DNA from: Dimorphilus gyrociliatus
Lineage: Eukaryota > Animalia > Annelida
Assembly: GCA_904063045.1 (NCBI GenBank)
Contig: CAJFCJ010000005.1
Coordinates: forward strand, 2,474,165 to 2,538,164
Length of the DNA stretch: 64,000 bases
Reading direction: 5' to 3'
The translations under genes were made by a program, and so were the position numbers. This document shows, one piece after another, positions 31,947 to 61,732 of this stretch (within the stretch, counting starts at the first letter, position 1; each line of letters opens with the position of its first letter). Below the pieces are notes generated by a model. The model was not told where the DNA came from. It searched no databases and saw nothing but the letters and a program-made list of their open reading frames with translations.

Positions 31947-32205
31947 GGAAGCGTTACTTAACTTTCTAATTAATTTGAGAATTTTGACTTGTTCTAACGA
32001 CAACCAGCTAATAAAATAATTTAGCTAGGGATGGATAAAAAAGTGTTGAGAGTACATGTCAAGTAATTAATTATGCTTGAGCTCAATAAATTTTTAACAG
32101 CATAGCCGATACCTTTAGCTTTTATATAATTATAAAATATAAAAAAATTTGTACAAGTTTTCTTCTCAATAGGCCTATGAAGCTCTTTCATGTAACTCTT
32201 CTACA

Positions 32206-39583: not shown

Positions 39584-41571
39584 TTATGTAAATATGCATT
39601 GTTTAATGAAAACTAAAATTTGTTGATGTCGATCAGTATCTTTCGAATTAGTACGTTTTTTCACAAACCTATTGTGAAAATGTACATATTCGTTAAAGAA
39701 ATATTTGACCAAATAAAATTTTTCATCTTCAGAAAGCTTTAGAGAGAAAATCATTCATTTTAATTCAATTATTATTAATTAATTATGTTTATAGAAATGA
39801 AAACAAGTCAAACCATTTCCAATTGTAAACCAGATAGAAATTGGCATATTTCCTTTCTATAGATGTTATCATCGTAGTATCTTGTCAAATTAAATATTAT
39901 TTCAATTAATTTCTTTATAGTAAATATCTAGAATGAATGATAAAAGATTATCTATTTAATAGTAATATAAGTAGATTCCTATACCTTTTTAGCGTAGGAA
40001 TAATACTTTTTAATAAATCTACATAGATATATTAAATTTATATAGTTTGTCTCATTATAGTATAATTCCAGAATTTGACCAGCTAATTTCAATACATTCC
40101 AAAAATATGATGATTTTGAAACGTCATATTCGGAGATTGATTGAAATAGATTGTTAATTATGAACTGATATATTGCTTTATTACTTCTCAGATTTTCAGT
40201 TAATAATTGATATTTTGTTCGATGGCAGAATATCTTAATGAATAAAATAAGTTATAGAATAACCATGTATATAACAGTTTTATATATGAATATATACCTC
40301 GAGAAGTTCCATTATCTCTTCGCTATCTGTTGATTTATTAATATTTCTAGTTATAACTCTATAACCAGAATCGTAGAGGAACTTTTGAAAATAACTCGTT
40401 TTGTCCTGTCTCGTAGATATTTCGTTGAGTAGTGTACTAAAGGCATTACCCGAAATTTTCTGATTTCAAAATCATAGATAGTTATGTAATATATTTTATA
40501 TATATATATATATAAATATTAATATTATTACAGTTAATCCTTTCATCGTTCTTTCTCCTTCCAAATTCCAGCCTCTAAATTCAGAATATATTCCTCCAAA
40601 CATACCGAAAAACTTCAATCGTTTGTGTTTATTTATAAAGTTTCTATAAGAAAATATACATCATAAATTATTAATAACCTATTTTGTAATATTTTAATAG
40701 TAGAATAGATCAATTACATTATATTCTCCTTCGATGCTTGCCAACCGGATATATCAAAATGGGTTAATTTTTCCCAATAGCCGGCAAGTAATAAGTCATC
40801 AATCTTTTTGTCTGCTAATTCATTATCGCAATTGTAGGGATAAAAACCGTCTCGCGTATATGGAAGTATGTCAACGTGTACTCTTGAAATATTCAATTTT
40901 TCTATAGAACTCTTGTTAAGTAAAGAGAAATATGTTATATCAACAGTATAGCTTTTAGGATATGAAATGTCAAAGACTTTCAACTTGTAGAACTCTCTAA
41001 GACAATCTAAATTTGTAATACTTGTATCGGTTAACGTTAGTTCCTCAATTTGCGGTAATTCAAGTGACAGGAAGTTCAGTTGATTATCTGTAATGTTTGT
41101 ACCAGTTACATCCAGTCTTAGTAATTGTTTAAAGCAAGTTAGATATTGCATATTCTGAATTTGATGCTCTAAATCAGAATTCTCCGAGAAATGACATTTC
41201 TTTAGATTCAATTCTTGAATGTATTTCGTGTTCAAGTAAGGAAGCCACTTTTCAAGGCCGACGTTTTTCATTAATTCCACTGTAATTGATCTTATATTAT
41301 GACCTTCTAGAAACTTTAAAGCTCTTTCCGACTCTATCTTTATTCCATTAAACTTTACATCGACCAAATAGCAAATTTCACTATCAAAAAAATCCAGTAG
41401 TCTTTCAGGTATACCGTTATGAAATTCACTGAGTTCTGTTAGAAGGTTTTCAGCCGCTAAACGATTGATAAGCCTAGATTTCTTAAATATCTCCTTATCA
41501 GTAAATATTATATCATGGTTTTTAACAACTGTCCAAAAAGATAGTTCAATTAAACTTTGAAATTGAATCAT
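39584..41571 (-). CDS. ZYG11/ZER1-like BC-box - LRR protein, paralogue Z1, 6 exons
   Basis: N-terminal FQSLIELSFWTV (BC-box-like); LRRs; FDISGW followed by exon 2 FINKHKRLKFFGMF, matching the ZYG11 LDVSG...FIxxRPxMQFVGL region. All exons splice in frame to TAA at 39586-39584. Confidence 0.8.
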
Positions 41572-41956: not shown

Positions 41957-43900
41957 TTAAGAAATTATGTGATCTCTAATAAAAGAATAAACGAAACTAT
42001 CCGAAAAGCAAATGTTGTTACGACCTGAAAGATGTGGTGTAAATTCAATAAAGTATTCTCTAGCCAATAGGAATCTATCTGACTTATTCAGCTATAAAGA
42101 AGAAATTTTTTATAATAATTAATAATAAATATTTTATAATAAACAAACAATTTTACCTTTTTAACATCCAAGTTTGTTATAAATCTACATATGTGATTCT
42201 TATAAGTATCCCGATCAATATAAAGCGACGATTCAAATACTATTGGAAATAGTTGTCTATTGCTTAAATACTAAAAATCAAAACAAGACTTAAAAAGATG
42301 ATTTTTAATTAGTTAATTAATTAAACTTACATATTTGGCGAAAGAGTAATATTTCAATATAAATTTATAGAAATGTTTAAACTCTCCATCGGTAATAGTA
42401 GGACCAAATCCACGGAGTAATTGTAGTAGAATTTTCAACAAATCCGTAAATCTTGGAGAATCGGTTATATCAAATTCATTTATCAATTCGAAAAGTCTAT
42501 CAATAACGCTCCTATGCGCAATATAGATATGCTTACTCTCGTGACAATCTAATAGATATCTATACTTTTGACAGAATATCTGCAAATGATCAAATTATCA
42601 ATATAGAATACGTTTTTCTATGAATTTTAAAGTGAAACTAACCAAAAGAACTTCAATAATATCATTTAAAAATTCTTCTGTATAACATGAACTATGAATT
42701 AGTCTTTTATGCTTTTCATTGGAAGCAAACTGAAGAAAGTAGCAAAAGTTGTCTCTACGGCTTAGTATCTCATTGAGTATTGTACGAAAATCATCCTTTG
42801 ATATTCCCTTCAGAAGACAGAGAGAGAGAGAGAGAGATAGATTATGAAAACAACAGTTATCTTTATTTAAATAATTACCGTTAAATTATCAAAATTCTCC
42901 ATCTTCATAAGTTTACGATATGGAACTTTGTGATTAGTAGCATTGAATATGCCTAGATAATTCAATTTCTTGTGTTTTTCCAAAAACCGTCTACGAAACA
43001 GGAAACGTATTAAATATTAAATATTGAATATATTAATAAAAAATATCTTGTATACTTTATACTCTCTTCCGAAGCTTCCCATCCCGAAATATCCAAATGC
43101 TTTAAATTCTCCCAATCAGCTTCTTTCAAAAAAACGTTAATTTTAAAATATCCCACCGCATTCGGCTCTAGCGGCACTTGCATATTCCTGCCTGTATTAT
43201 CCTCTTTAGTAATATCCAAATACTCTAAAAATCTTAAATTTAACAGAGAATAATAAGATAATATCTCCATGTTAGATTTCGAAAATGCGAATGATAACTT
43301 CTTTAGTTTGTTCAATCTACGAAGATGATACAGTTCTCTTATTTCTGTTTCCGAAATGTTAACATCCTCTATCTGCGGAAGCTCGATAGAGATAAACCGC
43401 AGTTGGCGGTCCGTAATATTAGTAAGAGAAACATCCAACTTTCGCAACTGTTTAAAAGTTGCGAAATGTTTGATATTCTTCAACTGAACAGCAAGTCTTC
43501 GATTCCGAGAGAAGAAACAATTACGCAATGACAACTCCTCCAATCCGTTTGATTTAATGTACTTTATCCATCTATTTATACCAACTTTTAAAAAATTTTC
43601 GAATATCGTACTCTTTAATTGATGACCAATAAGGAAACGTAACGATTTTGAACATTCAATGTCCCTTCCATTCAATTCAACGAAAACCAAAAAACTAAAC
43701 TCCTTTCTGAAAAATTTCCATAAATTATCAATTCTAGCTCCGTAACAGAATGAAAACTCTTTTAACAAAGTTTCCGACACAAAGCGATTGAGGATAGGAT
43801 TTTTCTGACTTTTACCCAAAAAATAACTTGATATAACTGTATTCCAATTTTCAGAAATAGTAGCAATACAAATTTGCTGAAGACTTAAAACACTCGACAT
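41957..43900 (-). CDS. ZYG11/ZER1-like protein, paralogue Z2, 6 exons
   Basis: MSSVLSLQQICIATI; LRRs; LDISGW; exon 2 FLEKHKKLNYLGIF; exons splice in frame to TAA at 41959-41957. Confidence 0.8.
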
Positions 43901-43932
43901 TATTAGCTCAGTATAAAAATTCAAATATTATT

Positions 43933-44198: not shown

Positions 44199-46236
44199 TT
44201 ATTTTATTTCATTCGTACCACTTATCCAATTTCTAAAATATTTAACAATTTTATCGTGACAAGCTCTTGATCCTCTTCTTTCTAAGCACATGTGACCATT
44301 TCTCTCCAATTTATCATACGTTCTAAAATACGATTTAACCATAGTAAATCTTTCATCGTTATTTAACTATAATAACATAAGAAAACGGACTTAATAATTA
44401 ATAATTGATTTATTTAAATACATATATAACTAACCATACTTATATCTAATGTACTAATAAACTCCCAAAGTTGTTCCCAATAACAGAATGAATCGTATAC
44501 GTTAAATTCGAATATTCTTTCAATTAGTTCGCACCTATCCATAAACTATGATAAAATAGTAAAAGTATTGTTTTTTTTTATGTAAATCTCTCTCTATTTT
44601 GTTTTTTAAAAAAAAAAATACCATTTTACATTGTCCAAAGTTACTATAAACAAATTTAAAGAGAGCGTACAGATGTGGAGAATGAGTTTCATCCAATTTA
44701 GTTAATAGTTTTGCAGTCATTGGTAATATATTCCAAAAATAATCGGATTTATGTAGTTCATTTAATACTAAACGTATCATTATACTACTCAGTATTTTAC
44801 CATATTCCTGTTTTTGTTCAATATCTACAGCAACTGCTGAATCCAAAATAAGGAAATACTTTTCGCAGAAAACCTTTTTTTATTAATATTTTTTGTATTA
44901 ATTTTGTTTTTTTAAAAAAAAAATGGAAATAATATTGTGCTTTTATATTCCTTTTTACCGTTAAAGTTTCTTGAATATCAAGATTACTTCTATCTGGTGA
45001 ATTGTAATACATTGCTGCACTTGCTAAACCATTTAAAAAGGGCAAATGCCTCGTTGTATTAATTCTCATTGAGATTTCATTCATTTCATTTAAGAATTTA
45101 TCATTACTAATTCTCTAATGATTATAATTGAAAAAATGACAATAATTTATTTATAGCCTTAACTTGAATAGTAAAATTTTTTACCGTTAATTTACGGATA
45201 TCTTTACCCCGAACGTTCAAACTTTTGTAAGATTCTTGATATTTTCCAAATAGGCCAATAAACTCTAAATTATCATATTTTTTAATAAATCGTCTGAAAG
45301 GAAATTAATTAGTCGATTTACTTAAATATTAAATTATTTTGGCTTCATTTTGCGGTTTTACTTAATAATATCTGGCCTAACTCTCCATCCTGATAGATCA
45401 AGATGCGTTATATCTCGCCAATCAGCTTCTTCGAGAAGACTATTAATAGTCCATAATTGATCATCAGATGTGTTGTAATTTTTTAAGGAACGTAAATTAT
45501 CTCTATCTGAATTAGTTTTTTTGTCGCAGCCAAACTTTGAGATATTTAATTTTGTTAGATTTGTCATCTTTAACAGGGCGAAATAGGAACCATAAACCTT
45601 TGACTTTCTAGGATAAGAACAATCTAGTACCTTCAAGTAGGAAAATGCCAAAAGAACCCTGAGATCGCTGATAGACGTTTCAGATATATTTAAATCTTCG
45701 ACCTTCGAAGCTAATTCATATGACATAGTATGCAAATGTGTATTAGAAATATCCGTACAAGATAAATCCAACTTTACTAATTGTTTAAAAAAACACAAGT
45801 TTCTTATATCTGATATATCTTGCCCATTTCTATCTCCATCATTATCATCCGTAAAGCGACATCCTCTTAATGAAAGCTCTTTTAACTGACTACCGTCTAA
45901 ATATCCCATCCATTCACCAACTTTCCAACTAATTAAATATGTGACCTTCAATCTTTCAACAAGGTGACCCTTTAAAAAATTCATTGAATGCAAGTAAGTA
46001 ACGCTATTCCCATTTAACCTAATATTTATTAAATCGCAATACATCTTGCTAAATAATTTCAAGAAACGCTCGGGAAATTCAATATAGATATGGTTAATTT
46101 CGTCAAATATTTTTTCAGCGTAAATATAATTAATAATTCCATGTTTCTTGAAAACTTCCCCATTTAAGAAATTAACTTCGAAATTTCTAACAATACTAAA
46201 TAGAGCCATCTTTTCTAAACTTGGATGATTCGCCAT
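44199..46236 (-). CDS. ZYG11/ZER1-like protein, paralogue Z3, 6 exons
   Basis: MANHPSLEKMALFSI; LDLSGW; exon 2 FIKKYDNLEFIGLF; exons splice in frame to TAA at 44201-44199. Confidence 0.8.
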
Positions 46237-46492
46237 TTTTGGTTCAGTATCGGATATGACTTGGCTATTGAGTAATTTCAAAACTAAAATTTAGCCTATA
46301 AGAAAAAAAACCATAGAAAAATAGGTCAATTTATTTCTCCAAAAATGTAAATAAAAGATCAATTAATCTCTCAATTTCTTATAAGTTCTATAATGAATTT
46401 AATATTGTATTATTAAAATATAACAAATACTGTCACTATATGATAATGAACTTGTACATCTATAGGTTAATTAATAATTAAACGTTGTTTAT

Positions 46493-48498
46493 CTATCTTC
46501 GCATATACTTATGAAAAAATAATCGAATATTTTTGTCGTATAAATATTCCGTTTCTTGAGCTTGATAACCCTCTTCCAGTTTAAAACATTTATAATTAAC
46601 CATAAAACACTTAGCCAAACTATGATATTCATTTTTCGATAGCTAAAAAAAAAAACAAATTGCAAAATTATAAATGAATTAATTGATTATATTAAAATTA
46701 ATATGAAATTTTTAACAAACAGTTTCAACATCAACACTTTTCAACAACTTCCAAATAATCTTTCTATAACTTCTTCCATCAAATATCTTTTTGAAATTAA
46801 ACAAATAACGTATTAAACCTGATCTATTCATTAGCTATAAAACAAAAAGAAACATAATTTCATTCTAATTATCATAATTAATAAATATTCAAACCATTTT
46901 ATACAAGTGAAAATTGATTAGAAGTAACGAAAAAATACCAGAATTCCATGGAGTTATCATTTCGCTTCTTTTAATAATTTGAGGGACTAATTTGAATATT
47001 CTCCAAAAACTATCCGATTTATAATCTAGGAATTTAGTTAAAACAATTCCGCACAAGTTCAGATCGTACTTTAATTCTCGTTTACAGAATGAAGCATGAG
47101 TGTAAAATACAAATATTTCACTTATAACCTAAAATTGGGATAAATATATATTAAAAAACAGAACATTTCTATCAATATCTTTATAATTCTGACCTCAAAT
47201 ATTCTAGATTTAACATAACCAGGAATTGTATTTAAATCGGTTGTTTTCAAAGTTTCCAGTAGATTATCGTGACCCAAATATTTATCATATCTAGTTGCTA
47301 TATGATTCAAATCAGTCATAAATTCAATACTTGATAATCCCTGTTGATGTGAAAACAATTTATAATTAAATACAATTTCTAATTAAATATACTGTATTAT
47401 CGTACTGTTAATTCAAATATATCATTTTCTTGAAACTTTAGATTTCGATCAAAATCAATATTCGTCTTGAATAAACCCAAAAAACTCAACTTGTTGTGTC
47501 TCTGTACAAAGAACCTGTTGTTTTCCCCAAAGAAAATGTTTATTAGTATGTAACATATATAAATTCAATAATTACTTTAGTGAATCTATTGGAAGAATCC
47601 AACCAGACATATCAAAATACTTTAAATCCTTCCATTCGGCTTCTCTTAACAAAAAGTCTGTAAAATAATATTCTCCATTTCTTTTAAAGTATTCAGAAGG
47701 TAAAGTATTCTTGTAAGCTGAATGTCTTGCTATTTTGATTGACTTTAAATTTAATAATAGAATTAAAGATGGAACTGTTAATAATAGCTTTTCGTCAACT
47801 GGATAAGAGCAATCGAGAACTGTAAGCTTTGTAAATTTTTTCAACAATCCAAGATTCGATACGCAAGTTTCAGATATATTTAACTCTTGAATATTCTTTA
47901 ATTTATGAGATAAATATTTCAATTGCAAGTTACTTAATTTCGTTGAAGAGATATCTAATTTAACTAAATGTTTAAATTTCGTAATAGGTTTAACAGAATC
48001 TATTTTATCTTTTGTATTATTGCATGAAGATTTTGTAGAAGGAATGGGAGGAGAACGTGGAGTATAGGGAGCGGAAGAAGAAAAAGATGCAAAAGAAGTG
48101 GAAGTAGTTGTAACTAGACAACCTTTAACGCAAAGTTCTTCCAATTTTTTTGCGTTAATTATAGATAGCCAATGATTTAGCTTTATACTCTGTAAATGAC
48201 GTATACGAATAGACTTTAGCGGATGTCCATTGAGGAAATTTACTGCAGTCTTTTTAGTTATTCTATGTCCATTCAGGTCAACATTATGTAGCCAACATGT
48301 GTCTCTATTAAACACCTTTAAGAATTGTTGAGGTATTCCAATATAATAATCATCTATCTCCTTCAAGATTTTCTCCACAATATACGAGCATATAACTCTA
48401 TGTCTAAAGAGTAATTTCTTAGCATAGAAATGAGTTTCAAAGTTCTTAGCTATGCAGTACAAAGTAAGGTCTTCTAAACGTGGAATTTTTAAAGTCAT
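46493..48498 (-). CDS. ZYG11/ZER1-like protein, paralogue Z4, 6 exons
   Basis: MTLKIPRLEDLTLYCI; Ser/Pro insertion within the LRRs; FDMSGW; exon 2 FVQRHNKLSFLGLFKT; exons splice in frame to TAG at 46495-46493. Confidence 0.8.
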
Positions 48499-48754: not shown

Positions 48755-49618
48755 TTATATAGACGCCATACCAACTAAGGTATCTCCTCCTCCACCACCA
48801 CCTCCTCCTCCTCCTCCTCCTCCCTCTTTTATAGTATTTTTATTTGCATTCTTCTTGTAAAGTGATTGTTTTTTAGTGTTATCTGTGTAGTGGAGATGAC
48901 TGTTTACAGAAACTTCTGGTGGTCCTTGAAATATCGCCCTCGTAGCCATTAACTTCTCAAGCGAATCTTGCGTTTGCTTTTCATCGAAAAATGGACTCTT
49001 TAATGTATCTCTGATACTATCGAAAATTTTTCTTTTATCAGCAGCAAACTGAATTAGACTTTGGTTGAGTTGACATAATTCAGCTTGCAATTGAATTTCG
49101 CAATTATTCACATACTCTGAGAATGATTTAAAAAGATCAGCAATTTCAATTTCCATCATCTTCTTATACTTTTCCATTTCATCCTCTTGTTTTCTCCTTA
49201 TTACTTGGGATTTTTCAAATATTTGATTTAAAGTACGAATTTTACAACTATCTTCACCATGATCGTAATCGATACATTTCGAACAAAGTTGCTCAGCTTT
49301 ACAAGTCAAACATAACAAGTTTGGTTTCATAACTAAATTATTGTGTTTCTTACACATTTCTTTATCAGTGCGCTGATCGTTTATTGATGCTTTTATTAAA
49401 CTTTTTGGTAGACCATTAACGCCATCTTTTGAAAGCTTTGTCTTTGCTCTACAGTTTGGACACTTGATAAACTTTCCACGAGATATCTTCAAAAGACACT
49501 CGTGACAGAATATATGTTGACAAGGTAGAACTCTCGGATCTTTATTTAACCAAATATCTAAACATACAGAACACTCAAGAGTTCTTGCATCGATGACGTA
49601 ATCCTTATTAGATTCCAT
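48755..49618 (-). CDS. TRIM-like RING - B-box - coiled coil protein with a poly-Gly tail
   Basis: LECSVC...PCQHIFCHEC...CPNC; B-box CKKH...CLTC...CSKC...H; coiled coil; G12 run. The last codons may be spliced at GTATGG. Confidence 0.8.
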   Translation of the reverse strand: MESNKDYVIDARTLECSVCLDIWLNKDPRVLPCQHIFCHECLLKISRGKFIKCPNCRAKTKLSKDGVNGLPKSLIKASINDQRTDKEMCKKHNNLVMKPNLLCLTCKAEQLCSKCIDYDHGEDSCKIRTLNQIFEKSQVIRRKQEDEMEKYKKMMEIEIADLFKSFSEYVNNCEIQLQAELCQLNQSLIQFAADKRKIFDSIRDTLKSPFFDEKQTQDSLEKLMATRAIFQGPPEVSVNSHLHYTDNTKKQSLYKKNANKNTIKEGGGGGGGGGGGGGDTLVGMASI

Positions 49619-50587: not shown

Positions 50588-52412
50588 ATGTGTCGTTTAT
50601 TCAAGTTGTTATTTATCTTATTGAACTTATTTTCCTGTAAGAAGGCAATTTATATAATAATTATAAATGCGTATATATATATATATATATATAATTGATT
50701 TTTTTGCAGATGGACAATGCCTACACTGTCCTCAAACTCCTAAAGGTTGGATAGGATTCAAGACGGAGACGAAATGCTATAAAGTATCAAATTTAGAGGA
50801 GTCTGGTATTGAAAATGCTATGAAAAAATGTCAAGAAACATTCGATAATGGAGATTTAGCTGATTTGCAATTCGAAGATTATGCAACATTTTTCCCAAAA
50901 CTTTCTCAGATTACAAAGGAGAATTTAATATTAAAGACTACGTTTTTGCATAATTTGCCAGCTAGTCTTTTCTATATTAATTTTAAAAAGGAATTTGATC
51001 ATTATCCAATAATCTTTTGGATTAATAATCAACCCCTTTCAATACCAACTGAATATATTGACAACAGTATTAGAGGCACAGATCTTCATTTGATAGTGAA
51101 TGAGTATGTAAAAGATAGAAATTTTATATAGATATAAACATATGTACTCACGTTTTTTTTAGGGCTCATGGAATGTTTAAGATAAACAGAGAATTTGAAA
51201 ATGTTAAGAACGTTTTATGTCAAGTTCCGGCAATCCTTAAATGTCCAAAAGTTCCGGCTGATAGTTATTCTTTTAAAACAAACAGAAAATGCTATATTGT
51301 AAAGCGTTTAAACAATTCTGAAAGATCAGTAGAGGGAGCCAGACAAGCGTGTTCATCAACAGGAAAATTCAAATTGGCAAATCTAGAAACTGAAACTGAA
51401 TTACATTCAAAATTTATACCGTTTGTTGAATCGCTACCTTTAAAAGTTGAGAGAGAAATTACGAATATTCTACCAACTAGTACTGTTGGCTTCTATTTTG
51501 AATATATTAAAGAGGCGAGAGGAACTTATTACTATCCAAATGGAGAAGTAATACCATCAATTGAAACTCAACAAGATGAAGGACGGTCAGAACTTGCATT
51601 GTTTTCCCATATAATGGAGTAAGTACTATGATATTCAGTATTATTATAAATAAAATAAATACGTTGTTTGTACTTTTTAGTAATACTTATGTATTTGGAT
51701 ACGGATATTATTCAGACGAAATTACAGCAGCTATCTGTGAATATAGAGAACCTCACTTAATTATCGATCGTTATATGCGTCATTTTGTTGAGAATGAGGA
51801 TAAATATATCTGTTATGATCTATCAGGAAATGCAAATGATCGTTATATACTGTTTAAAGATTCTTTATCAAAAACAGTAATAATTGGACAACTACAAGAC
51901 GATTGTCATTTTGGTAAAATATTTATAATTACTCCAATGTCGAATCTGACTCTAAGCTCAAATGATAAATGGTCTATTGGCGATGTTATAAACACAAAGA
52001 TAATACATGTTGTTGTCCTTAATCAAAAAAAATTAAGATTTATTATTAAAACTCCATCGCCAACTGTATTTACTATTGAAATAAGAAAAAGTGACGAAAA
52101 GAAATATTTGGATATCACCGTTAATCAAATAAATAAGGAAACATCATCGGGAATTTTTGGTAATAATTCTTTTATCATTATATACAGAATTGTAAATTGA
52201 TCTTCAATAATTGTTCTTTAGGCGATATTCATAAAAAGAATTTTGTATTCTCCGGAGATGAAATTGACGATTCAACAAGTACTTTGAACGTTGAAGGAAA
52301 ATTGTTTGAGGCAAAAGTAATAGCAAAGGATGGCGAATCTCCATTTTGGCTTTTATCTAAAGAAGCGGCATTCTATCCTAATCATTTAACGGATTATATT
52401 CTTTCAAATTAA
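50588..52412 (+). CDS. Secreted CTL-CTL-ITIH_C/VWD-like protein, paralogue A (DPH replaced by DRY)
   Basis: Signal exon MCRLFKLLFILLNLFS splices to YGQCLHCP. Two CTL-like units (CP..P.GW...KT..KCY...A...C); ICYDLSG, IIGQL, SSGIFG, AFYP...DYIL. Confidence 0.8.
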
Positions 52413-52764
52413 AATTTTCAAAATAAAATTTCGAAATGTTACAAAAAATATAAATACCACTCATCCTGTTGTTAATTTAACTACTTACATTATAGACCAA
52501 TTATGAACAATGACTGGTAAACTTTAAGTAAAATTGATATTAATCAAGTATATAACTGTGATTAATATTTACAACAGTGGATGATAAGACTCAATAACAC
52601 AACACGATATAGAACAAGGTTACTGAGTAAAACACTTGCTTTGTGCATTTGAAGAGACAAACAATTCGATATTATATATCGATTATTTGACTGTCAAATT
52701 GTTCATATCTGCAAAAAAAAACACCTAAAAAAATAAGATAATTTATTAGTAATAACAATTAAAA

Positions 52765-54818
52765 ATGATACTTTTCAAAGTTTTTATCCTCTATCAGATT
52801 GTAGTTGTTTGGTGTTTAGATTGTCCAGATTTACCCGATGGATGGTATTCTGTAAAAACGGAAGCCAAGTGTTATGGTTTCCGTTTTCTTCGAATTGACG
52901 AAAGAAACTATACAATCGCTCAACGAATATGTTTAGATGAATTGATAGAAGGACATATAGCCGATCTTGAATTTGAGAATATCGACGAACTTGGTTATAC
53001 GTTAATTGATTCTTTAGATGAAAATTCGAATGTTCCTCGAGAAACTGTAATTAATGGCATTCCAGTTCATGGTTTCTTTATAGGTTATCAAACTTTATTA
53101 GAGGATGGAAATATTAACTATCTTTGGCTAAGTGGAAGACTTGTTAAGGATCAGGTCAAAATTCAAGGTCCAAAAGACAAAGGTCTTTTACAGTTTATTG
53201 TGAATGACACTCTGTATGAACTTTAGTTTCAGTAGCAGTATATACAATGCTCGTCAGAGGAAAGTGGACAGAAAATATGGGCTCATCTAGCTATAGAAAT
53301 GTAAGTCTCAGGGCAACATATATTTCAAATCCTTCAATTGAAGAGAGATCATACTTGCTGAACATCAAGAAGAGAATAACTCCTAGATTTCCTACTAAAC
53401 ACTACTTACTTAAAAATTAACATCAATTATTCTTGAAGTTCTATGACCACTGTGAACAACTTTCTTATCTATTTAAAGTCTTTGGTGCCATAAAGATCCT
53501 TCTTTATCATGCTAATGTACGATGATGCCTATTTGGACGTTATCCATTAACTTGTGACGAGCATTGCATACTTATATATAACACTTGTAATAAAATAGCT
53601 AAATTAACATTTACTTTTTTAGACGATCGGCGACCTTTTATAGCGGACAACCGGAAATAAATGTCGGAAGTGTTCTTTGTCAAGTTCCATCAACAATAAA
53701 ATGTCCGAATGTACCGAAAAATTGGCTAGGTTTCAAAACAAATCGAAAATGTTATATTTATCGTCCTCTGGAAGTTGAGGAGAGGTCATTTGAGAATTCA
53801 AAAGCTATTTGTGAGGGAATTGGAGGAATGAAAATGGCGAAATTATTTGGAGAGACGGAGCTTCTTTTAAGATTTGTTCCGAAAGTAAACGAAAATTCAA
53901 ATTTGTTTGATAAGACAGTACTCTACAATGGAATTTTATATCCCGGATTCTATTTTGACGATGAGCAGGCTATCAGTGAAGGAAATCATTTTGGCATTGT
54001 TGTTACAGAGTAAGTTGATCCAAATTGTATACTTAATCAATTATAATATGTTTAAAACTAATTGTCATTTAACATTACGATTAGAGATACGTTTGACTTA
54101 TATTTACCGGAAAAGACTACTAGAATGACGGGCGTCGTTTGCGATATAGAATCAAGTTCGGGTAAACAAGATCCCCATATGCGTCATTTTATTCAGAGAT
54201 ACGGAAAGTATATTTGCTACGACCTTATTGGTGAAGGTCATCAAAAATTCATTTTGTATAAAGATCTACCGACGAATATTATCATTGCTGGCCAATTGAG
54301 AGACGATTACTATTTTGGAAATATAATCGTACAGAGTTCTTTATTCAATTATACAATTAGAGCTGATCATCTGTGGAATATTCGAAGAGAAATTTATCAT
54401 GATAGACAATTAAGTATACAAATAGAAAATTTAGAAGAGATAATTATTATCATTAACGAAATACATCCAAGTGAATTTGTAATTAAAAAACATAGAAATA
54501 GTATTGGTTCAAATTACTTAAATGTTCAAGTTATACAAATGAACAATGTAGAGAGATCTGGTGGAATATTTGGTAATGTTTTCCTTTCAAAATGATATTT
54601 TTATATAAAAAGAAAAAGAAATTTATTTTTCAGGTGATCTTGCAAAGAAGAAAATTTCATTTTATGAAAATATTCAAGAGAATTTAAAAGGTGCCATTGA
54701 TATTGAAGGAAAGATATTTGATGCTACAATAACTGAAAGAGAAAATTCTATATGTTGGCTAATATCTGCTAAAGCCGCACTTTACCCTAAAGAAAAAAGA
54801 GATTATCTATTAGATTAA
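52765..54818 (+). CDS. Secreted CTL-CTL-DPH-ITIH_C-like protein, paralogue B
   Basis: Signal peptide, two CTL-like domains, DPH at 54170-54178, ICYDLIGE...IIAGQL...SGGIFG; TAA at 54816-54818. Confidence 0.8.
53245..53566. mobile_element. 322-bp Tc1/mariner-like MITE in intron 1 of paralogue B
   Basis: Imperfect 26-bp TIRs (CAATGCTCGTCAGAGGAAAGTGGACA vs CAATGCTCGTCACAAGTTAATGGATA; first 12 bp perfect). TA on the left flank, CA on the right. Absent from the short homologous intron of paralogue D. Confidence 0.7.
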
Positions 54819-55055
54819 ATGTTATTACTTTCAAGTGTTTTTATCTTATTCAAATATAGTCAATTTTTATCGACACTATATAATACAAATACAAAAATAT
54901 GAATATGAAATAATATTAACATTATTCAACTAATTCTTGTACATAATTCCTATTGTTTTATATTTTTAATGAGAACAATATGGTTGCGTAATACTAACGC
55001 ATTCTCCATTTAATAGTAATAACGGTTGGTTTAGTACGCGTTCATCGAGTTCGAG

Positions 55056-55129
55056 ATTGGCGGGTTTTCGTTGAACTCTATTGAAAGGTGTATTTTAAAA
55101 CGCTACATTAGGAAACCTGGTTATAAATA
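55056..55129 (+). promoter_or_regulatory. Putative Pol II promoter of the Gag-like gene (reverse CCAAT plus TATA)
   Basis: ATTGGCGGG at 55056-55064 and TATAAATA at 55122-55129, about 300 bp upstream of the ATG at 55426. Confidence 0.4.
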
Positions 55130-55425
55130 GTTAAGTATTTCAGAAAAAAGATGGCATTAGTGGTACCTTTGTCAAGTACTCTAAAAGTAAAACTACTCAA
55201 TTGTCTACCAGTCCTGTCTTATTATATATAATATAAGAATTCTTCTTACTTTTATTGAACTTATTAATTATTTCGAATTTCTAATTAACGAGATAGTTAA
55301 AAGTAAAATAAAAGGAATAGAATTGGATATTTATCTTTTAATTATATTCGTGGATTGTAAAAGACTGTTAAAACGTTATTGAAGAGATTGGAATATTACT
55401 GAGGCGCCCTTGATGTTCCATCAAA

Positions 55426-56340
55426 ATGTCTGATAATAACGGATATCTCATTCCAGGAAAAAATATTCCATTAGAATATACAGGAGGCGAAAATTTTTAC
55501 AATAATGAAAAGCATGAAGAAGTAGCAAAGATCTTTGATACGGTCATCTATTCTTTGGGATCGGTGGAAAGTTCTCTAGAGAAACAGGTTCGAGATAGTT
55601 GCCTTGAACTTAAAAAATTAAGAAATTCGATTGATGAGCTAAGAAACATCATCTTAGGTCAGAAGAATTGTGAAAGTAGAAGTTTTCTCAAACGTGATAT
55701 TAAATTTTCGAATGATAAGAGTGAAAGTTCAACAACCTTCAACTGCCGTTGTAAGGATCGACCGATCAGTCTTCCGAAGTGGAATCCAAAGTTTAAATAC
55801 GACGGAAATCCAAGGACCTATCACGACTTTATTGAAACTCATAAAATGATAGTAAACGCTGGAAATTACTATGATTGGCAAAAATTAGACATGCTGCTTG
55901 ACTCTTGCAAAGGAGAGGCTCTGGATCTTATTTCAAGGTGTTATATGTCTGGTCCAAAAGGCTATGAGGCCGCTCTGGAGATCCTAGAGCGAATGGGTGG
56001 CAGTAAAGTATCGAAACAGGTATCCTTATACATCGAACTCGCTGAGATGCCACCAGTCGATAAAAGAGACTTGAGAACCCTTACGAATCTTCGAAATTTG
56101 GCTAATCATGCTTTCACTATGCACAAAATTTACGGTGATCCTCCTGTAGATTCTCTCGTTAGATTTAAAGGTCTCCTTATCGAGAAAAAGTTGAACGAAC
56201 AACTCAGAGAAGACTGGAAAAATTTTGGAATAGAAGACAATGCTCCTGAAAAAACAAAGTTCGAACGCCTTGTCGAATTCTTATTTATAACTGTAGAGAA
56301 GTCGAAAAAGGAGTATGAGAGAAAACTAAATGAGAACTAA
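55426..56340 (+). CDS. Stand-alone BEL/Pao-type (DUF1759-like) Gag capsid protein, 304 aa, intronless
   Basis: N-terminal coiled coil, then ISLPKWNPKFKYDGNPRTYHDF...QKLDMLLDSCKGEALDLI...YEAALEILERMG (DUF1759 pattern) and KKLNEQLREDW...FERLVEFL. No CCHC knuckle, pol or flanking LTR visible. AATAAA at 56391-56396. Confidence 0.8.
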   Translation: MSDNNGYLIPGKNIPLEYTGGENFYNNEKHEEVAKIFDTVIYSLGSVESSLEKQVRDSCLELKKLRNSIDELRNIILGQKNCESRSFLKRDIKFSNDKSESSTTFNCRCKDRPISLPKWNPKFKYDGNPRTYHDFIETHKMIVNAGNYYDWQKLDMLLDSCKGEALDLISRCYMSGPKGYEAALEILERMGGSKVSKQVSLYIELAEMPPVDKRDLRTLTNLRNLANHAFTMHKIYGDPPVDSLVRFKGLLIEKKLNEQLREDWKNFGIEDNAPEKTKFERLVEFLFITVEKSKKEYERKLNEN

Positions 56341-56900
56341 CATTCCTTCTTTCTTGTACGAAAGACAAAAAGGAAAAACAGATTTATCTCAATAAATGTA
56401 TTTGAAAAACAAACTTATTAAGTGTCTATATATAAAACGAAAGAAACTTGATAAGTGTGCTACAGCTTTAGAAAACTGGTGAAATGTAAGATTTACTTTG
56501 TATAATATGACACAACTGTCAAGTAGTACTACACGTACCTTTTACATAATTAGAATATAAATATTATAATATTATAACTTAAGTTACATTAAAAGCTATT
56601 TTAGGTATTGATTATCAGAATGTAATTATTGACAATATACTAAAATATGCTGGAATTTTTTATTAACGGCTGTAAGAGTGTGTCTGTTCTTGTTTTTCAG
56701 ACTGATTGACAAGACTCAACTGTATAGAAATGGCAAAAAAGAACAATGTAAATGAACAGTATGTTTCTCAGAACAGTTTGATGATTTGAAAAGACGAAAA
56801 TTACGGCATCTAATGTCGATTGTTCGCCTTATGTTTTATTCAAAAAGACTAAAAAAAACACCTAAAAAATAAGATAATTTATTAGTAATAACAATTAAAA

Positions 56901-58612
56901 ATGATACTTTTCAAAGTTTTTATCCTCTATCAGATTGTAGTTGTTTGGTGTTTAGATTGTCCAGATTTACCCGATGGATGGTATTCTGTAAAAACGGAAG
57001 CCAAGTGTTATGGTTTCCGTTTTCTTCGAATTGACGAAAGAAACTATACAATCGCTCAACGAATATGTTTAGATGAATTGATAGAAGGACATATAGCCGA
57101 TCTTGAATTTGAGAATATCGACGAACTTGGTTATACGTTAATTGATTCTTTAGATGAAAATTCGAATGTTCCTCGAGAAACTGTAATTAATGGCATTCCA
57201 GTTCATGGTTTCTTTATAGGTTATCAAACTTTATTAGAGGATGGAAATATCAACTATCTTTGGCTAAGTGGAAGATCGTTAACGGATCCGAATGATATTG
57301 AAGGACCTTTAAAGAACAGCTACTTTCAGTTTATTGTGAATGATAATCCGTATGAATTTTAGTTCTATATACATAAGTATATGATATATTGCTTGACATT
57401 AAGTCGCTTTATTTATTTTATAGGCGATTGGCGACCTTTTACAGAGGAGAACCGGAAAGAAATGTCGGAAATGTTCTTTGTCAAGTTCCATCAACAATAA
57501 AATGTCCGAATGTACCGAAAAATTGGCTAGGTTTCAAAACAAATCGAAAATGTTATATTTATCGTCCTCTGGAAGTTGAGGAGAGGTCATTTGAGAATTC
57601 AAAAGCTATTTGTGAGGGAATTGGAGGAATGAAAATGGCGAAATTATTTGGAGAGACGGAGCTTCTTTTAAGATTTGTTCCGAAAGTAAACGAAAATTCA
57701 AATTTGTTTGATAAGACAGTACTCTACAATGGAATTTTATATCCCGGATTCTATTTTGACGATGAGCAGGCTATCAGTGGAGGAAATCATTTTGGAATCG
57801 TTGTGACAAAGTAAGCTATTGTCTAGTTTAACAGCTTTGTATGATCTTATTTATTACACGAAAACATTTACAGGAGTTCTTTCGATTTGTATCTTGCAAC
57901 CAAAATTTCTAAAATGACAGGTATTGTATGTGATATAGAATCGAGTTCGCTTAAACAAGATCCCCATATTCGTCACTATATACGAGAAGATGGAAAATAT
58001 ATTTGTTACGATTTTTCTGGTGAAACCAGACAAAAATTCGTATTGTTTAAGGATTTAATATCGAACATTATCATTGCTGGTCAATTGCGGGACGACGATT
58101 ATTTGGGAAATATAATTGTACAGAGTACATTTTTTAATTATACAATTATGGCTGATCGTCCATGGAGTTTTAAAGGGAATATATACTTGGACGATCGTTT
58201 ATCCATTAAAATTTTAAACATTAATACTGTTATCGTTACTATTAAAAGAAAAGCTCAAAGCGTATTCGTAATTACAAAGCATAGAAATATTGCTAACTCT
58301 CAATATTTAAATGTTCAAGCTAGTGAACTTGATAGTGATAAAGTTACAGGAATAATGGGTTAGGTTAAAGATTATACAAATTTTTAAACAGATATTTGAA
58401 ATTTTATAGTAAAATGTCTCTTCTTAGGTGATATGCTAAAGAAAAAGATGATTTTTTTCGAAGGAATTCAAGTGTATTCAAAAGGGGCTATTAACATCGA
58501 AGGAAAAACATTCGACGCTCGATTAATTGAACGAGAGAAATCTTCGTGTTGGCTTCTTAAGGCTGAAGCCGCATTTTATCCAAAAAGGTTAACTGACTAT
58601 TTATTAAATTAG
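56901..58612 (+). CDS. Secreted CTL-CTL-DPH-ITIH_C-like protein, paralogue D
   Basis: Same exon layout as B; DPH at 57959-57967; TAG at 58610-58612. Confidence 0.8.
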
Positions 58613-59280
58613 AAAAGGTAAGTCATATTTTTTTGGAAGTTTTCTTTTTTTTTTTTTTTGTAAAAATGGATGATTTTATTACACAAGTGTTGATCTCTAT
58701 TTGTTTTATCGCAAAGTAACAGATTTCTGTTAAAACTTTTTTTATCTACCACAAACAATATAATGCTTATCTTTAAAACAAGAAATTTTTTTTCACTATT
58801 TATAGGCACGTTAAAAACGTTCTATTGACCCAATATCGACTCAAGTAGTCAAGCCTTTACATACGTCATTATATATTATTACTCATAATAGGAAAACCTT
58901 AGTAAACCTCTGTCTATCCTTTCTATAGCAATGTTATAATATTGTATAAGTAAAGATATTTTAGAATGTTTCTTATCTTTCACAGATGAAATTACAACCA
59001 TTCAATGATAAAAACCATAAAAGGTTTTAGAATTGTAATTGCAAAATCTTCGTAATTGTGTTATTCATTATCCCCTAGTTTTAGGAGTCAAAAGATTTAA
59101 AAATAGTTCCTGCGTATATCATTATATTGTACTATTCTATATATAAATATATATAATTGTATTTGTGGAGTTTATTGATCATAAGATTTTCTATATAAGA
59201 TCATTGCAAGTTTAGTTAGGAATCATTATTGAAACGGAAAAGCTGAGCATTTCGCTTAAAACTAATTAAAATAGTTTGGA

Positions 59281-59850
59281 ATGGAACTTTCGATGTATGT
59301 TATTGATCCTGGATATTTAGAATGTTCAATTTGTTTGGAATTATGGTTGGAAAATGATCCAAGAACTTTATCTTGCCAGCATACTTACTGTTATGCATGT
59401 CTAAAGCAAATCTTCAGAAATGGTATTATAAAATGTCCCAATTGTAGAATTCTGGTAAAAATAAGATCAGTAAGAGATTTACCAAAGAATCTTGCTTCTT
59501 CATCAATAAGCAGTCAACAAACGAAAAAAATACATGAAATAGAAACTATTCGAACTTTGCTTCTACAGAATCTGCGTCGTCTAAAAGTAAAGAACGATAA
59601 AATGAAATCGTTATTAGAATGCGAAGTAGAAACTTTAAAGAATTTTTGTCCTTCAATCCATAAAAGTAAAACTACAAATAAATATAAAAATGCAGCTGTT
59701 CAGACTGTTGAGAAAGATGCTTCAAAACGTCCCAGAAAGAAGGAAAGTATGCTAAACAAGTTCAAACTATTCAAAAAGACTAAAACTTATCGTTTGAATG
59801 ATAATTCAAAATTATTTAGTAAAAGTTTTCTTTCAATGTATAATTTTTAG
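59281..59850 (+). CDS. Short TRIM-like RING - coiled coil protein (no B-box), basic tail
   Basis: LECSICLELWLENDPRTLSCQHTYCYAC...IKCPNC; clear paralogue of 48755-49618. Confidence 0.75.
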   Translation: MELSMYVIDPGYLECSICLELWLENDPRTLSCQHTYCYACLKQIFRNGIIKCPNCRILVKIRSVRDLPKNLASSSISSQQTKKIHEIETIRTLLLQNLRRLKVKNDKMKSLLECEVETLKNFCPSIHKSKTTNKYKNAAVQTVEKDASKRPRKKESMLNKFKLFKKTKTYRLNDNSKLFSKSFLSMYNF

Positions 59851-60119
59851 ATGTATAGATCTATCCTTAATATTTCTCTATTTAAAAATGTGTTGTCTTA
59901 AATTGAGAGCATTTATATTATTCTGGTCAAATAAATTATATACAGAGTCTTTTAAAGTTATAGTTTCTTATATGTTTTACTTGATTTTAAAATAATAGAA
60001 CTCTAGTTAAAAATTTTTGAGTCAGTTGTTAATAGTTAATATTAACCTAAATATCAAACTAACGACTTGTTCAGCCTCGTTAACATCTAGATAAAGTTCT
60101 TTGATAAAAACTGTAAAGT

Positions 60120-61732
60120 ATGAAATTTTTTCATTATTTTCTTCTTTGTCAAATTGGAGTTATTTGGAGTTTCGACTGTCCAACTCTACCTCAAGGCTTT
60201 AAATTGGTGAAAACATCACATAAATGTCTCGCCATTCGATTTCTTGAGCCGTCAGAAAGACAATTTATGACTGCAAAGGCAATTTGTCAAAATGACTTAG
60301 ATAATGGACAGTTAATTGATTTAGAATCGCAGCATAAAATGGAATTTATTATGACGATAATGAATTTTGTAAACAAAAATCCCACTATTCATCGAGGTGT
60401 CGACATGAACGGGAAACTTTTCCCTGGTTTCTTCATTGACTTTTCAACATTGACCCAGAATGGAATAATCAGATATTTTTGGCCTAGTGGACGTGAAGTA
60501 GAACCTGCTCAAATTGGAGGACCAGATCGGACAGATCTTCTCTTTTTCGTGCTAAAAGATGATGGAAGCCCGTCCGGTCTTTATTCTGGAGAAAACGAGT
60601 CAAATATTGGAAGTGTTGTTTGTGAAGTTCCATCTCTACTTAAATGTCCTCCTACTCCTGACGGTTGGCTAGGTGTCCAATCAAATTCGGTATGTGGCAT
60701 TTTACGTCCATTGAAAGAGTTTGAGAGAACTTGGATGGGAGCGAAAAGTGCATGTGAAAGTGTTCCGGGTATGGAGTTGGCTAGATTAACAAATAATGAA
60801 AACATTGTCTTTAATATCGTAAAAGTCATAAACCAGAATAAAGAATTGTTTGAAATAGAAGGTGATCCGACTGTGAAACCTTCGTTCTTTTTTTACGAAA
60901 CAATAAATCTCTCTAATCTAGATATAGATAAAGCTGGTTTAGCTATCATAGGGTAATAACAATTGTAAAATAAAATTAAAGAGCTCACTTTTCTTATTCA
61001 TTTTTAGACAAAAACCGAAGTTTATAACAGGTTCTCAGCCAATAACTGGAACACTTTGTTTTTTAAAGGCAGACTCAAGTCAAGGAGATCCTCATCTTTT
61101 ACACTACATACCGAGTTCTGGAAAATATATTTGCCATGATTTAATTGGTGAAGCTGGCCAAAAGTTTATACTATACAAAGATTTATTGACGAATGTTATC
61201 ATTGCTGGAGAATTGCGGGATGATTACTATTTCGGTAAAATAATTATCTCAAGTTTGTTCTTCAATCATACGATTAGCGCAAATGAAGTATGGAAAGCGA
61301 GAGAGACGTTTTATTACGAGAAGAAATTAAAGATAGAGGTGCTGTCTCTCAATGAAATAATAATTACAGTTAATAATGGTCAATCTGGTAAATTCATTAT
61401 CAAGAAGAATTCAAATAGTATTCATTTAAGTTACTTGAACTTTCATATTATTCAAATGAATGAGAAAAGATCTGGTGGAATATTTGGTAAATATAAACAA
61501 AAACAGATTAAAGAGTTTAATAATTAATTAAATATAAATCGTTTTAGGCGACATTGCTAATAAAAAGTATGAATTCTTCGAAAGAGTACAGAGAAACTCT
61601 ATGGCTGCTGTTAGAATTGACGGAAAAACATTTACAGCTAGGATAACAGAAAGAGATCATCTATTTTGTTGGCTTTTGCCAAATAAAGCCGTATTCTATC
61701 CAAAAGCGACACGGGATTATATATTAGATTAA
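60120..61732 (+). CDS. Secreted CTL-CTL-GDPH-ITIH_C-like protein, paralogue E
   Basis: Signal peptide, two CTL-like domains, GDPH at 61084-61095, ICHDLIGE, IIAGEL, SGGIFG; TAA at 61730-61732. Confidence 0.8.

What the first reader, a model, noticed from the sequence alone, without database searches (positions are those of the whole stretch)
50588..61732. Secreted double lectins fused to an ITIH-type (G)DPH autocleavage domain: possible covalent glycan-tagging system
Seen: four paralogues have signal peptide - CTL - CTL - C-terminal domain. In B, D and E that domain starts with DPH (54170, 57959; GDPH at 61084), followed by ICxDxxGE...F(I/V)L(Y/F)KD...IIAG(Q/E)L and later a GI(F/M)G motif. Known: this resembles the inter-alpha-trypsin inhibitor heavy-chain C-terminal pattern (DPHF...LCFNIDG...VNGQL...HGLLG). 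In ITIH, Asp-Pro cleavage leaves the Asp ester-linked to bikunin chondroitin sulfate; GDPH sites in MUC2, FCGBP and RGM also self-cleave, with a reactive anhydride proposed for cross-linking. ITIHs carry VIT-vWA upstream, not lectins. Inference: self-processing releases a di-lectin with an activated C-terminal Asp that can attach covalently to glycans or amines (matrix, mucus or microbe surfaces), analogous to thioester opsonins. I do not know this architecture from the literature.
Basis: partly seen in the sequence, partly recalled or inferred. Interest (0 to 1): 0.8.

Follow-up and report, generated by a model that had tools for sequence, protein, structure and literature searches.

The report
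Lectin-fold proteins with GDPH self-cleavage domain
Four neighbouring genes of the tiny marine worm Dimorphilus gyrociliatus encode secreted proteins in which two C-type-lectin-fold domains are joined to a very divergent relative of the self-cleaving 'GDPH' domain of mucins and inter-alpha-inhibitor heavy chains; I found no description of this combination, and neither the cleavage nor any covalent tagging has been tested.

Summary
The window is annelid (Dimorphilus gyrociliatus), not human. It carries four intact tandem genes on the + strand (A 50588-52412, B 52765-54818, D 56901-58612, E 60120-61732). Each encodes a signal peptide, two CTLD-fold domains and a ~195-aa C-terminal beta-sandwich. 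That sandwich starts with DPH in B, D and E, at exactly the coordinates given. In A the motif has become DRY.

Pfam does not recognise the C-terminal domain in the window proteins. A profile search of 1.84 billion proteins found a family of 47 cluster representatives; every named genuine member is D. gyrociliatus. In this family D, P and H are each kept in at least 90% of sequences, at about 25% overall identity. ITI_HC_C is the Pfam family matching most of these relatives: 5 of 47, below threshold, collinear. The AlphaFold model (pLDDT 92) matches only VWD domains coherently in the PDB.

ITIH-C/VWD kinship is therefore supported, but remotely. The lectin fold is supported; the canonical sugar-binding motifs (EPN/QPD, WND) are absent. 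No cysteine is available to bridge the predicted cut, so Asp-Pro cleavage would free the di-CTLD, as in ITIH. Covalent glycan tagging remains an untested inference. Verdict: a new variant of a known kind, of moderate interest.

The parts
50588..52412 (+). Gene A, 5 exons (50588-50636, 50710-51103, 51163-51618, 51681-52159, 52222-52412), 522 aa: signal peptide, CTLD, CTLD, C-terminal sandwich. The DPH position reads DRY, and the C-terminal CW is replaced by FW.
52765..54818 (+). Gene B, 4 exons (52765-53213, 53623-54009, 54085-54572, 54634-54818), 502 aa, with QDPH.
56901..58612 (+). Gene D, 4 exons (56901-57349, 57424-57810, 57874-58358, 58428-58612), 501 aa. Identical to DgyrCDS3692 / CAD5114611.1.
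60120..61732 (+). Gene E, 3 exons (60120-60952, 61008-61486, 61548-61732), 498 aa, with GDPH. Identical to P0002.
54170..54178 (+). DPH codons of gene B: the predicted Asp-Pro self-cleavage site.
57959..57967 (+). DPH codons of gene D (residues 308-310). They follow a low-confidence 7-residue linker after the last strand of CTLD2.
61084..61095 (+). GDPH codons of gene E.
51766..51774 (+). DRY codons of gene A at the position aligned with DPH: a natural variant predicted not to cleave.
   Evidence: D-to-A/N mutants of FCGBP D10 do not cleave (PMC10880436)
56958..57487 (+). CTLD1 of gene D (residues ~20-171, spliced across intron 1). Cys 20, 36, 56 and 169.
57503..57937 (+). CTLD2 of gene D (residues ~177-300, spliced across intron 2). 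Cys 177, 193, 213 and 298.
57959..58609 (+). VWD-fold, ITIH-C-like domain of gene D (residues 308-501, spliced across intron 3, which sits at the GIMG motif). Cys 323 and 481.

Best explanation
These are four tandem, functional genes of the annelid Dimorphilus gyrociliatus. Each encodes a secreted protein built from two C-type-lectin-fold domains and a C-terminal beta-sandwich. The sandwich is a very divergent relative of the VWD / ITIH heavy-chain C-terminal domain and begins with the conserved (G)DPH motif. Shown: the gene structures, the folds, conservation of the motif across the family, and the lack of a cysteine that could bridge the site. Inferred: in B, D and E the Asp-Pro bond cuts itself in the secretory pathway, with the Asp side chain attacking its own carbonyl, as in ITIH3, MUC2 and FCGBP. 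Because nothing covalent holds the two pieces together, a di-CTLD of about 290 residues ending in Asp is released from a ~195-residue C-terminal domain. This is the ITIH way, not the disulfide-held FCGBP way. The transient Asp anhydride is most likely hydrolysed; transfer to a hydroxyl or amine is possible but is the least supported step. Gene A (DRY) would stay uncut. The same domain is fused to other N-terminal modules in at least 15 other D. gyrociliatus genes, so it behaves as a mobile processing module.
For: Gene models are intact and match database proteins. Purifying selection acts on both halves. The family profile search found 47 representatives, and D, P and H are each >=90% conserved at about 25% identity. 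ITI_HC_C gives sub-threshold, collinear hits in 5 of 47 relatives (E 5e-4 to 0.044). These hits start 13-24 residues after the DPH Asp, so they do not depend on the motif itself. Ten unrelated proteins from the same window gave no such hit. The AF2 domain model has pLDDT 92.3. Foldseek against the PDB returns VWF, MUC2, FCGBP D10, MUC5B and MUC5AC VWD domains at probability 0.98-1.00 and rmsd about 5 A over about 135 columns; all other hits have low probability (mostly below 0.3) and rmsd above 14 A. The full-length model has pLDDT 89, with tandem-CTLD hits at E 8e-5 and probability 1.00. Mature Cys counts are 4+4+2, one even set per domain, so no inter-fragment disulfide is expected. Literature: GDPH autocleavage, Asp anhydride and the ITIH3 ester to chondroitin sulfate (PMC8267560); D and H are required for cleavage, and ITIH3/5/6 have a VWD-like sandwich (PMC10880436); ITIH-C lacks the bridging Cys and is released (PMC11670116).
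Against: No window protein reaches any Pfam threshold for ITI_HC_C or VWD. The best relative scores 20.2 bits against a cutoff of 27. Profile searches of PDB sequences found nothing. Foldseek E-values for the domain are only 0.015-0.09 and TM is about 0.39. The models place no beta-1 strand before DPH, whereas in VWD the motif sits in the beta1-beta2 turn and cleavage relies on a cis Gly-Asp bond. B and D have Q rather than G before DPH. Gene A has lost the motif yet is still under purifying selection, so the domain has a role beyond cutting. There are no expression or protein data.
Confidence: 0.6

Rival explanations
1. The first reader's full model (a special case of the best explanation): the cut exists to activate the C-terminal Asp, which then becomes ester- or amide-linked to a glycan, matrix or microbial surface. 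The di-CTLD would thus be covalently planted, like ITIH heavy chains on chondroitin sulfate or hyaluronan, or like thioester opsonins.
For: The closest sequence family is ITI_HC_C, the one case where such transfer is established (PMC8267560). There is no bridging Cys, as in ITIH (PMC11670116). The Asp sits at the end of a flexible, low-pLDDT linker, so it should be more exposed than the buried Asp of FCGBP. The module is fused to adhesion or recognition domains (CTLD, Calx-beta) across the family.
Against: No acceptor is known. In FCGBP the anhydride was found hydrolysed and no adducts were seen (PMC8267560). The CTLDs lack EPN/QPD and WND, so glycan targeting is not indicated. Nothing here tests the chemistry.
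Confidence: 0.2
2. No cleavage occurs. DPH is kept as a structural turn or first-strand cap of a binding or oligomerisation beta-sandwich, and the proteins act as intact three-domain adhesion or recognition molecules.
For: No beta-1 strand is modelled before DPH, and G is missing in B and D. Gene A and a few relatives (GNPH, SNPH, GDPD) persist without the motif. Not every GDPH-bearing VWD is cleaved under all conditions: uncleaved MUC2 structures exist (PMC10880436).
Against: Conservation of all three residues at >=90% in a family with about 25% identity is hard to explain by a turn alone. These are exactly the residues needed for cleavage in FCGBP D10.
Confidence: 0.28
3. Annotation artefact or decaying pseudogenes in a repeat-rich region.
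For: A BEL/Pao-type gag-like ORF (DUF1759) lies between B and D. The public annotation fuses A and B into one product.
Against: All four reading frames are open with canonical splice sites. dN/dS is well below 1. Two models equal deposited proteins. The same architecture occurs in a second, AT-richer organism (L005).
Confidence: 0.02

Closest known systems
[quoted passage not shown]
   Same: DPH lies immediately upstream of the domain. A conserved Cys shortly after it maps near the start of the Pfam model. There is a GGLxG-type motif late in the domain and a C-terminal CW motif. No cysteine ties the upstream part to the domain, so cleavage means release. It is the Pfam family matching most family members (5 of 47).
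   Different: Scores stay below the gathering threshold (at most 20.2 against 27 bits), and the window proteins give no hit at all. The upstream partners are CTLDs rather than VIT-VWA. No beta-1 strand is modelled before DPH. True ITIHs were not retrieved by the family profile at E<=1e-3.
GDPH-containing VWD domains (FCGBP, MUC2, MUC5AC, SUSD2, BMPER)
   Same: Beta-sandwich fold (Foldseek probability ~1.0 to VWF, MUC2 and FCGBP D10). A (G)DPH motif lies at the N-terminal edge of the sandwich.
   Different: No Pfam VWD hit. No C8/TIL modules follow. No beta-1 strand and no disulfide that would hold the fragments together after cleavage. TM is only about 0.39.
Sponge Aggregation Factor 'wreath' domain (PMC11670116)
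   Same: A lineage-restricted, sequence-orphan domain that resembles VWD, ITIH-C and RGM by fold only. It keeps the Asp-Pro motif and lacks the bridging Cys. It is combined with Calx-beta in some proteins, as are the D. gyrociliatus relatives (P0033).
   Different: Different phylum. In the wreath domain the Asp-Pro lies in a beta1-beta2 hairpin.
Tandem-CTLD proteins (mannose receptor family: MR, DEC205, Endo180, PLA2R)
   Same: Two consecutive long-form CTLDs with the CP..GW...C hairpin and the C1-C4 disulfide pattern. These are the best Foldseek hits for the full-length model.
   Different: No CysR or FNII domains and no TM segment. The C2-C3 disulfide and the EPN/QPD-WND Ca/sugar site are absent. 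Pfam Lectin_C is sub-threshold.

Membership tests
ITI_HC_C (PF06668) | Pfam HMM score at or above the gathering threshold (27 bits) | tested here: not met
   Window exons and full-length P0001/P0002 give no hit at E<=1. The best relatives are P0018 at 20.2 bits (E 5e-4), P0033 at 17.8, P0028 at 15.7, P0037 at 15.2 and P0023 at 13.8.
ITI_HC_C (PF06668) | Asp-Pro-His cleavage motif directly N-terminal to the domain | tested here: met
   B, D and E have DPH. D, P and H are each >=90% conserved in the 41-sequence domain alignment. Gene A has DRY.
ITI_HC_C (PF06668) | No disulfide between the upstream part and the domain, so the domain is released after cleavage | tested here: met
   Mature Cys counts are 4 (CTLD1), 4 (CTLD2) and 2 (C-terminal domain) in B, D and E. 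The pairing is inferred, not observed.
ITI_HC_C (PF06668) | VIT and VWA domains upstream (ITIH architecture) | tested here: not met
   The upstream domains are CTLD folds. No VIT or VWA appears among the Pfam hits of the 47 relatives.
ITI_HC_C (PF06668) | Autocatalytic D-P cleavage and ester transfer of the Asp to a glycosaminoglycan | not testable with these tools
   Needs protein expression and mass spectrometry.
VWD (PF00094) | Pfam HMM match | tested here: not met
   VWD is not among the 25 Pfam families listed (of 26 matched) for the 47 relatives at E<=0.1. Profile searches of PDB sequences, which include many VWD chains, found nothing.
VWD (PF00094) | VWD beta-sandwich fold | tested here: met
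   Foldseek: 7wn4_E, 7pp6_B, 6tm2_A, 8qci_B and 8oer_A at probability 0.99-1.00, rmsd 4.8-5.9 A over 132-160 columns, TMq 0.36-0.40. E-values are only 0.015-0.05.
VWD (PF00094) | [quoted passage not shown] | tested here: not met
   AF2 models show a low-confidence linker (residues 301-307), then DPH (308-310), then the first strand (311-315). The strand before the linker belongs to CTLD2. This rests on models only, and no residue-level structural alignment was available.
VWD (PF00094) | Followed by C8/TIL modules (D assembly) | tested here: not met
   The proteins end 194 residues after the Asp of DPH.
C-type lectin-like domain (PF00059) | Pfam HMM score at or above the gathering threshold (22.6 bits) | tested here: not met
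   Best is 16 bits, E 0.021, covering only profile positions 3-37.
C-type lectin-like domain (PF00059) | CTLD fold and conserved disulfide framework | tested here: met
   Foldseek: DEC205 8hbc_A at E 7.7e-5, MR 6inn, and CD23 and LOX-1 with TMt 0.58-0.64 and rmsd 4-5 A, all at probability 1.00. The N-terminal Cys pair and C1/C4 positions are present; the C2-C3 pair is absent.
C-type lectin-like domain (PF00059) | Ca-dependent sugar site (EPN or QPD, plus WND) | tested here: not met
   No EPN, QPD or WND in any of the 8 window CTLDs, nor in P0003, P0007 or P0008.

The most novel reading that the evidence does not exclude
A spiralian lineage has turned the ITIH-type Asp-Pro self-cleaving domain into a general-purpose module. 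It is fused to recognition and adhesion domains (CTLD pairs here, Calx-beta and others elsewhere in the genome). Cleavage would release each partner with an activated C-terminal Asp that becomes covalently ester- or amide-linked to mucus, cuticle or cocoon glycans, or to microbes. That would be a protein-tagging chemistry so far known to operate only for inter-alpha-inhibitor heavy chains.
Probability: 0.2. Interest if true: 0.8.

Novelty: new variant of a known kind. Interest (0 to 1): 0.5.

Why it matters
GDPH/DPH self-cleavage is well known, but its purpose is settled only for ITIH, where the freed Asp is esterified to chondroitin sulfate. Here a compact, experimentally tractable annelid genome holds an expanded family, invisible to Pfam, in which this module is attached to different extracellular domains. 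It lacks the disulfide that normally masks the effect of cleavage, and natural motif-loss variants exist (gene A with DRY; GNPH, SNPH and GDPD elsewhere). That makes it a good system for asking whether release, covalent attachment, or both is the ancestral use of the domain. It also adds a link between VWD, ITIH-C, RGM and the sponge wreath domain. If only ordinary processing occurs, the finding is a modest addition: a new domain architecture and a candidate new Pfam family.

Tried and rejected
- Pfam on single exons and on full-length proteins: no ITI_HC_C or VWD hit, and Lectin_C only at E 0.02-0.085.
- Word-index protein searches. The exon-1 query of gene E found nothing, because the full-length kin fall outside the length window. 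The 41-sequence domain profile found only 4 proteins, two of them new (P0048, P0049), and no ITIH fragments. P0001 residues 1-295 returned only itself.
- Profile searches of PDB sequences returned only chance hits at E about 0.7.
- I could not obtain bona fide ITIH-C sequences through the tools, so no profile-profile (hhalign) test against ITIH-C was run.
- Foldseek gives no residue alignment and model coordinates are not exposed. I therefore could not check whether DPH superposes on the VWD GDPH, or whether Cys323 and Cys481 are within bonding distance.
- P0021 (Homalodisca, 8 short repeated stretches) was rejected as a spurious low-complexity hit.
- The organisms behind the Logan runs (SRR23372216/228/229, SRR31984834, ERR14224704/706) could not be identified.
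- The pseudogene reading was rejected.
Full report
**Source and context.** The window is AT-rich (25-36% GC per 2-kb window, mostly 26-32%) and has short GT-AG introns. The protein I spliced from gene D is identical to CAD5114611.1 (DgyrCDS3692) of Dimorphilus gyrociliatus, a miniature annelid with a 73.8-Mb genome (PMC7854359). From the window maps to contig CAJFCJ010000005.1 at about 2.474-2.538 Mb. It is not human, and nothing in it looks like a toxin or a virus, so the operators' binding notes do not restrict this work.

**Checking the observation.**
- Frame translations and an enumeration of splice sites give four intact + strand genes: A 50588-52412 (5 exons), B 52765-54818, D 56901-58612 and E 60120-61732.
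- Models D and E equal the deposited proteins P0001 and P0002 residue for residue.
- DPH begins at 54170 (B) and 57959 (D), and GDPH at 61084 (E), exactly as reported.
- In A the aligned triplet reads DRY (51766-51774).
- The N-termini are hydrophobic and there is no other TM-like segment, so the proteins are predicted to be secreted.
- tblastn finds only these four loci in the window, and shows that the two N-terminal domains are internal duplicates of each other (E about 1e-10, about 35% identity).
- dN/dS is 0.12-0.56 in both halves, so these are constrained genes.
- B and D share 95% DNA identity over exon 1 and 50 bp upstream, against 76% over the rest. This points to gene conversion or a mosaic history.

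**The N-terminal domains.** Pfam Lectin_C reaches only E 0.02-0.085.
- The full-length AlphaFold model has mean pLDDT 89.2 and pTM 0.70. It shows two beta-beta-alpha-alpha-beta units.
- Foldseek matches tandem-CTLD receptors: DEC205 at E 7.7e-5, plus mannose receptor, Endo180 and PLA2R. It also matches single CTLDs: CD23 and LOX-1 with TMt 0.58-0.64 and rmsd 4-5 A, all at probability 1.00.
- The cysteine framework fits a long-form CTLD without the C2-C3 pair.
- None of the eight CTLDs has EPN/QPD or WND.
- They are therefore CTLD-fold domains. Calling them lectins goes beyond the evidence.

**The C-terminal domain.**
- Sequence search. A 4-sequence profile of exon 3 was searched against 1.84 billion representative proteins. 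It gave 47 hits at E<=1e-3.
- Taxonomy. Of the 30 hits looked up, 17 carry a name. Sixteen are D. gyrociliatus; the seventeenth is a spurious repeat hit from Homalodisca. The remaining 13 come from unlabelled SRA assemblies, or in one case a JGI metagenome.
- Conservation. In a 41-sequence domain alignment (A3; 21-48% identity to P0001, mostly 21-30%), one Cys is invariant. D, P and H of the motif, a DD.Y, a W, a GG(L/I).G, a Q and a C-terminal Cys (the CW motif) are each >=90% conserved. The family consensus is GDPHF.Q. The natural exceptions are GNPH, SNPH and GDPD.
- Pfam. It does not recognise the window proteins, but ITI_HC_C matches 5 of the 47 relatives, more than any other family. E-values run from 5e-4 to 0.044. 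The matched stretches are collinear (profile positions 26-40 through 130-162 of 189) and start 13-24 residues after the DPH Asp, so they do not depend on the motif. Ten unrelated proteins from the same window gave no such hit.
- Fold. The AlphaFold model of P0001:296-501 is an all-beta sandwich with pLDDT 92.3. Its only coherent PDB matches are VWD domains of VWF, MUC2, FCGBP D10, MUC5B and MUC5AC, plus Cypridina luciferase, at probability 0.98-1.00 and rmsd about 5 A over about 135 columns. The E-values are weak (0.015-0.09) and TM is about 0.39.
- Agreement with the literature. The ITIH3/5/6 C-terminal domain is reported to be a VWD-like sandwich with GDPH that Pfam does not call VWD (PMC10880436). 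VWD, ITIH-C, RGM and the sponge wreath domain are reported to form a fold-level group sharing the Asp-Pro motif (PMC11670116).
- Conclusion. This is a remote member of that group, closest in sequence to ITI_HC_C but below its threshold.

**Differences from the known domains.**
- In VWD, and in the predicted ITIH domain, GDPH lies in the beta1-beta2 turn. In both of my models DPH follows a flexible 7-residue linker (pLDDT below 50 at residues 304-306) right after the last strand of CTLD2. The first sandwich strand comes after it.
- B and D have Q, not G, before DPH.
- There are no C8/TIL modules and no VIT-VWA domains.
- Cysteines are 4+4+2 per domain. Unlike FCGBP, MUC2 or SUSD2, no disulfide could hold the fragments together. 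The same situation is described for ITIH-C.

**Likely mechanism.**
- Established chemistry. The Asp side chain attacks its own carbonyl. The D-P bond breaks and an Asp anhydride forms, which water, hydroxyls or amines can open. In ITIH3 it ends as an ester on GalNAc C6 of chondroitin sulfate. In FCGBP it was found hydrolysed with no adducts (PMC8267560).
- Required residues. D-to-A/N and H-to-N mutations stop cleavage in FCGBP D10 (PMC10880436).
- Inference for this locus. B, D and E self-cleave in the secretory pathway and release a di-CTLD ending in Asp. Gene A does not. I put this at about 0.6.
- Covalent transfer. For it: the ITIH-like kinship, the missing bridge and the exposed linker. 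Against it: there is no known acceptor, the CTLDs lack a sugar site, and the chemistry is untested.
- Non-cleaving alternative. A purely structural role for DPH is about 0.28. For it: the missing beta-1 strand, and the persistence of motif-less members. Against it: the joint conservation of exactly the catalytic residues.

**Wider family.**
- In D. gyrociliatus the domain also follows six CTLDs (P0003, DgyrCDS3694, about 40 kb downstream on the same contig).
- It follows Calx-beta in P0033.
- It occurs twice in P0013, and precedes a Laminin_G_3-like region in P0010.
- A second, more AT-rich organism (25% GC) has the same CTLD-CTLD-GDPH layout with a short intron (L005).
- A full-text search for GDPH together with C-type lectin found no description of this architecture.

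**Verdict.** This is a new variant of a known kind, namely a GDPH self-cleaving VWD/ITIH-C-like module in a new, lineage-restricted sequence family and a new domain combination. Interest is moderate (0.5). It would be high only if covalent transfer is shown.

Noticed in passing
window 50588-54818 (L004 3688-7918): The public annotation has a single 986-aa product spanning genes A and B. In the sequence A has its own stop (52410-52412) and B has its own ATG and signal peptide (52765). The fused model is probably two genes merged.
   Followed up: partly
window 55426-56340 (+): A 304-aa ORF between genes B and D matches DUF1759 (E 3e-6), a domain I recall as typical of BEL/Pao retrotransposon gag-like proteins. 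It is probably a retroelement remnant inside the gene cluster.
   Followed up: partly
window 52714-53228 vs 56851-57364, and 53609-54817 vs 57411-58611: Genes B and D are 95% identical over exon 1 plus 50 bp upstream, but only 76% identical over the rest (dS 0.16 vs 1.1). This suggests gene conversion or a mosaic duplication. Intron 1 of B is 409 bp against 74 bp in D, and the extra sequence is unique in the window.
   Followed up: partly
window 1175-2629, 30483-32003, 33008-34459, 35088-36677, 37560-38984, 48755-49618, 59281-59850; also L003: A large array of mostly intronless RING-finger ORFs (about 190-530 aa). Several share a coiled-coil-like middle and a long C-terminal region with no Pfam hit. 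The same family flanks P0003 about 40 kb away, so the CTLD-GDPH genes sit inside a RING gene cluster.
   Followed up: partly
window 40714-41571, 43010-43924, 45358-46281, 47572-48498 (-): Four tandem ~285-308-aa ORFs that look like paralogues. One gives a weak LRR_4 hit. Function unknown.
   Followed up: no
window 4-522 (+): The ORF at the window edge consists of Thr/Pro/Met-rich tandem repeats of about 32 residues and looks mucin-like. It is truncated by the window start.
   Followed up: no
window 48755-49618 (-): A RING protein whose C-terminal region contains a run of 13 glycines.
   Followed up: no
window 17621-19219 (-) and 6718-8046 (+): A VWA-domain ORF (E 1.6e-14) and an ORF with LRR plus a rhodopsin-type 7TM domain (LGR-like receptor fragment). 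Both are unrelated to the finding.
   Followed up: no
L005 1422-2840 (Logan SRR23372229; also SRR23372216): An unidentified eukaryote with 25% GC carries a gene with the same CTLD-CTLD-GDPH-domain layout (P0007 plus an upstream CTLD exon). It shares about 25% identity with gene D, so the architecture is older than the D. gyrociliatus cluster.
   Followed up: partly
P0013 (DgyrCDS8601), P0010 (DgyrCDS3249), P0033 (DgyrCDS6856): The GDPH domain occurs twice in one 1127-aa protein, precedes a Laminin_G_3-like region in another, and follows Calx-beta in a third. It behaves as a mobile module, and in some relatives the motif has changed (GNPH, SNPH, GDPD).
   Followed up: partly
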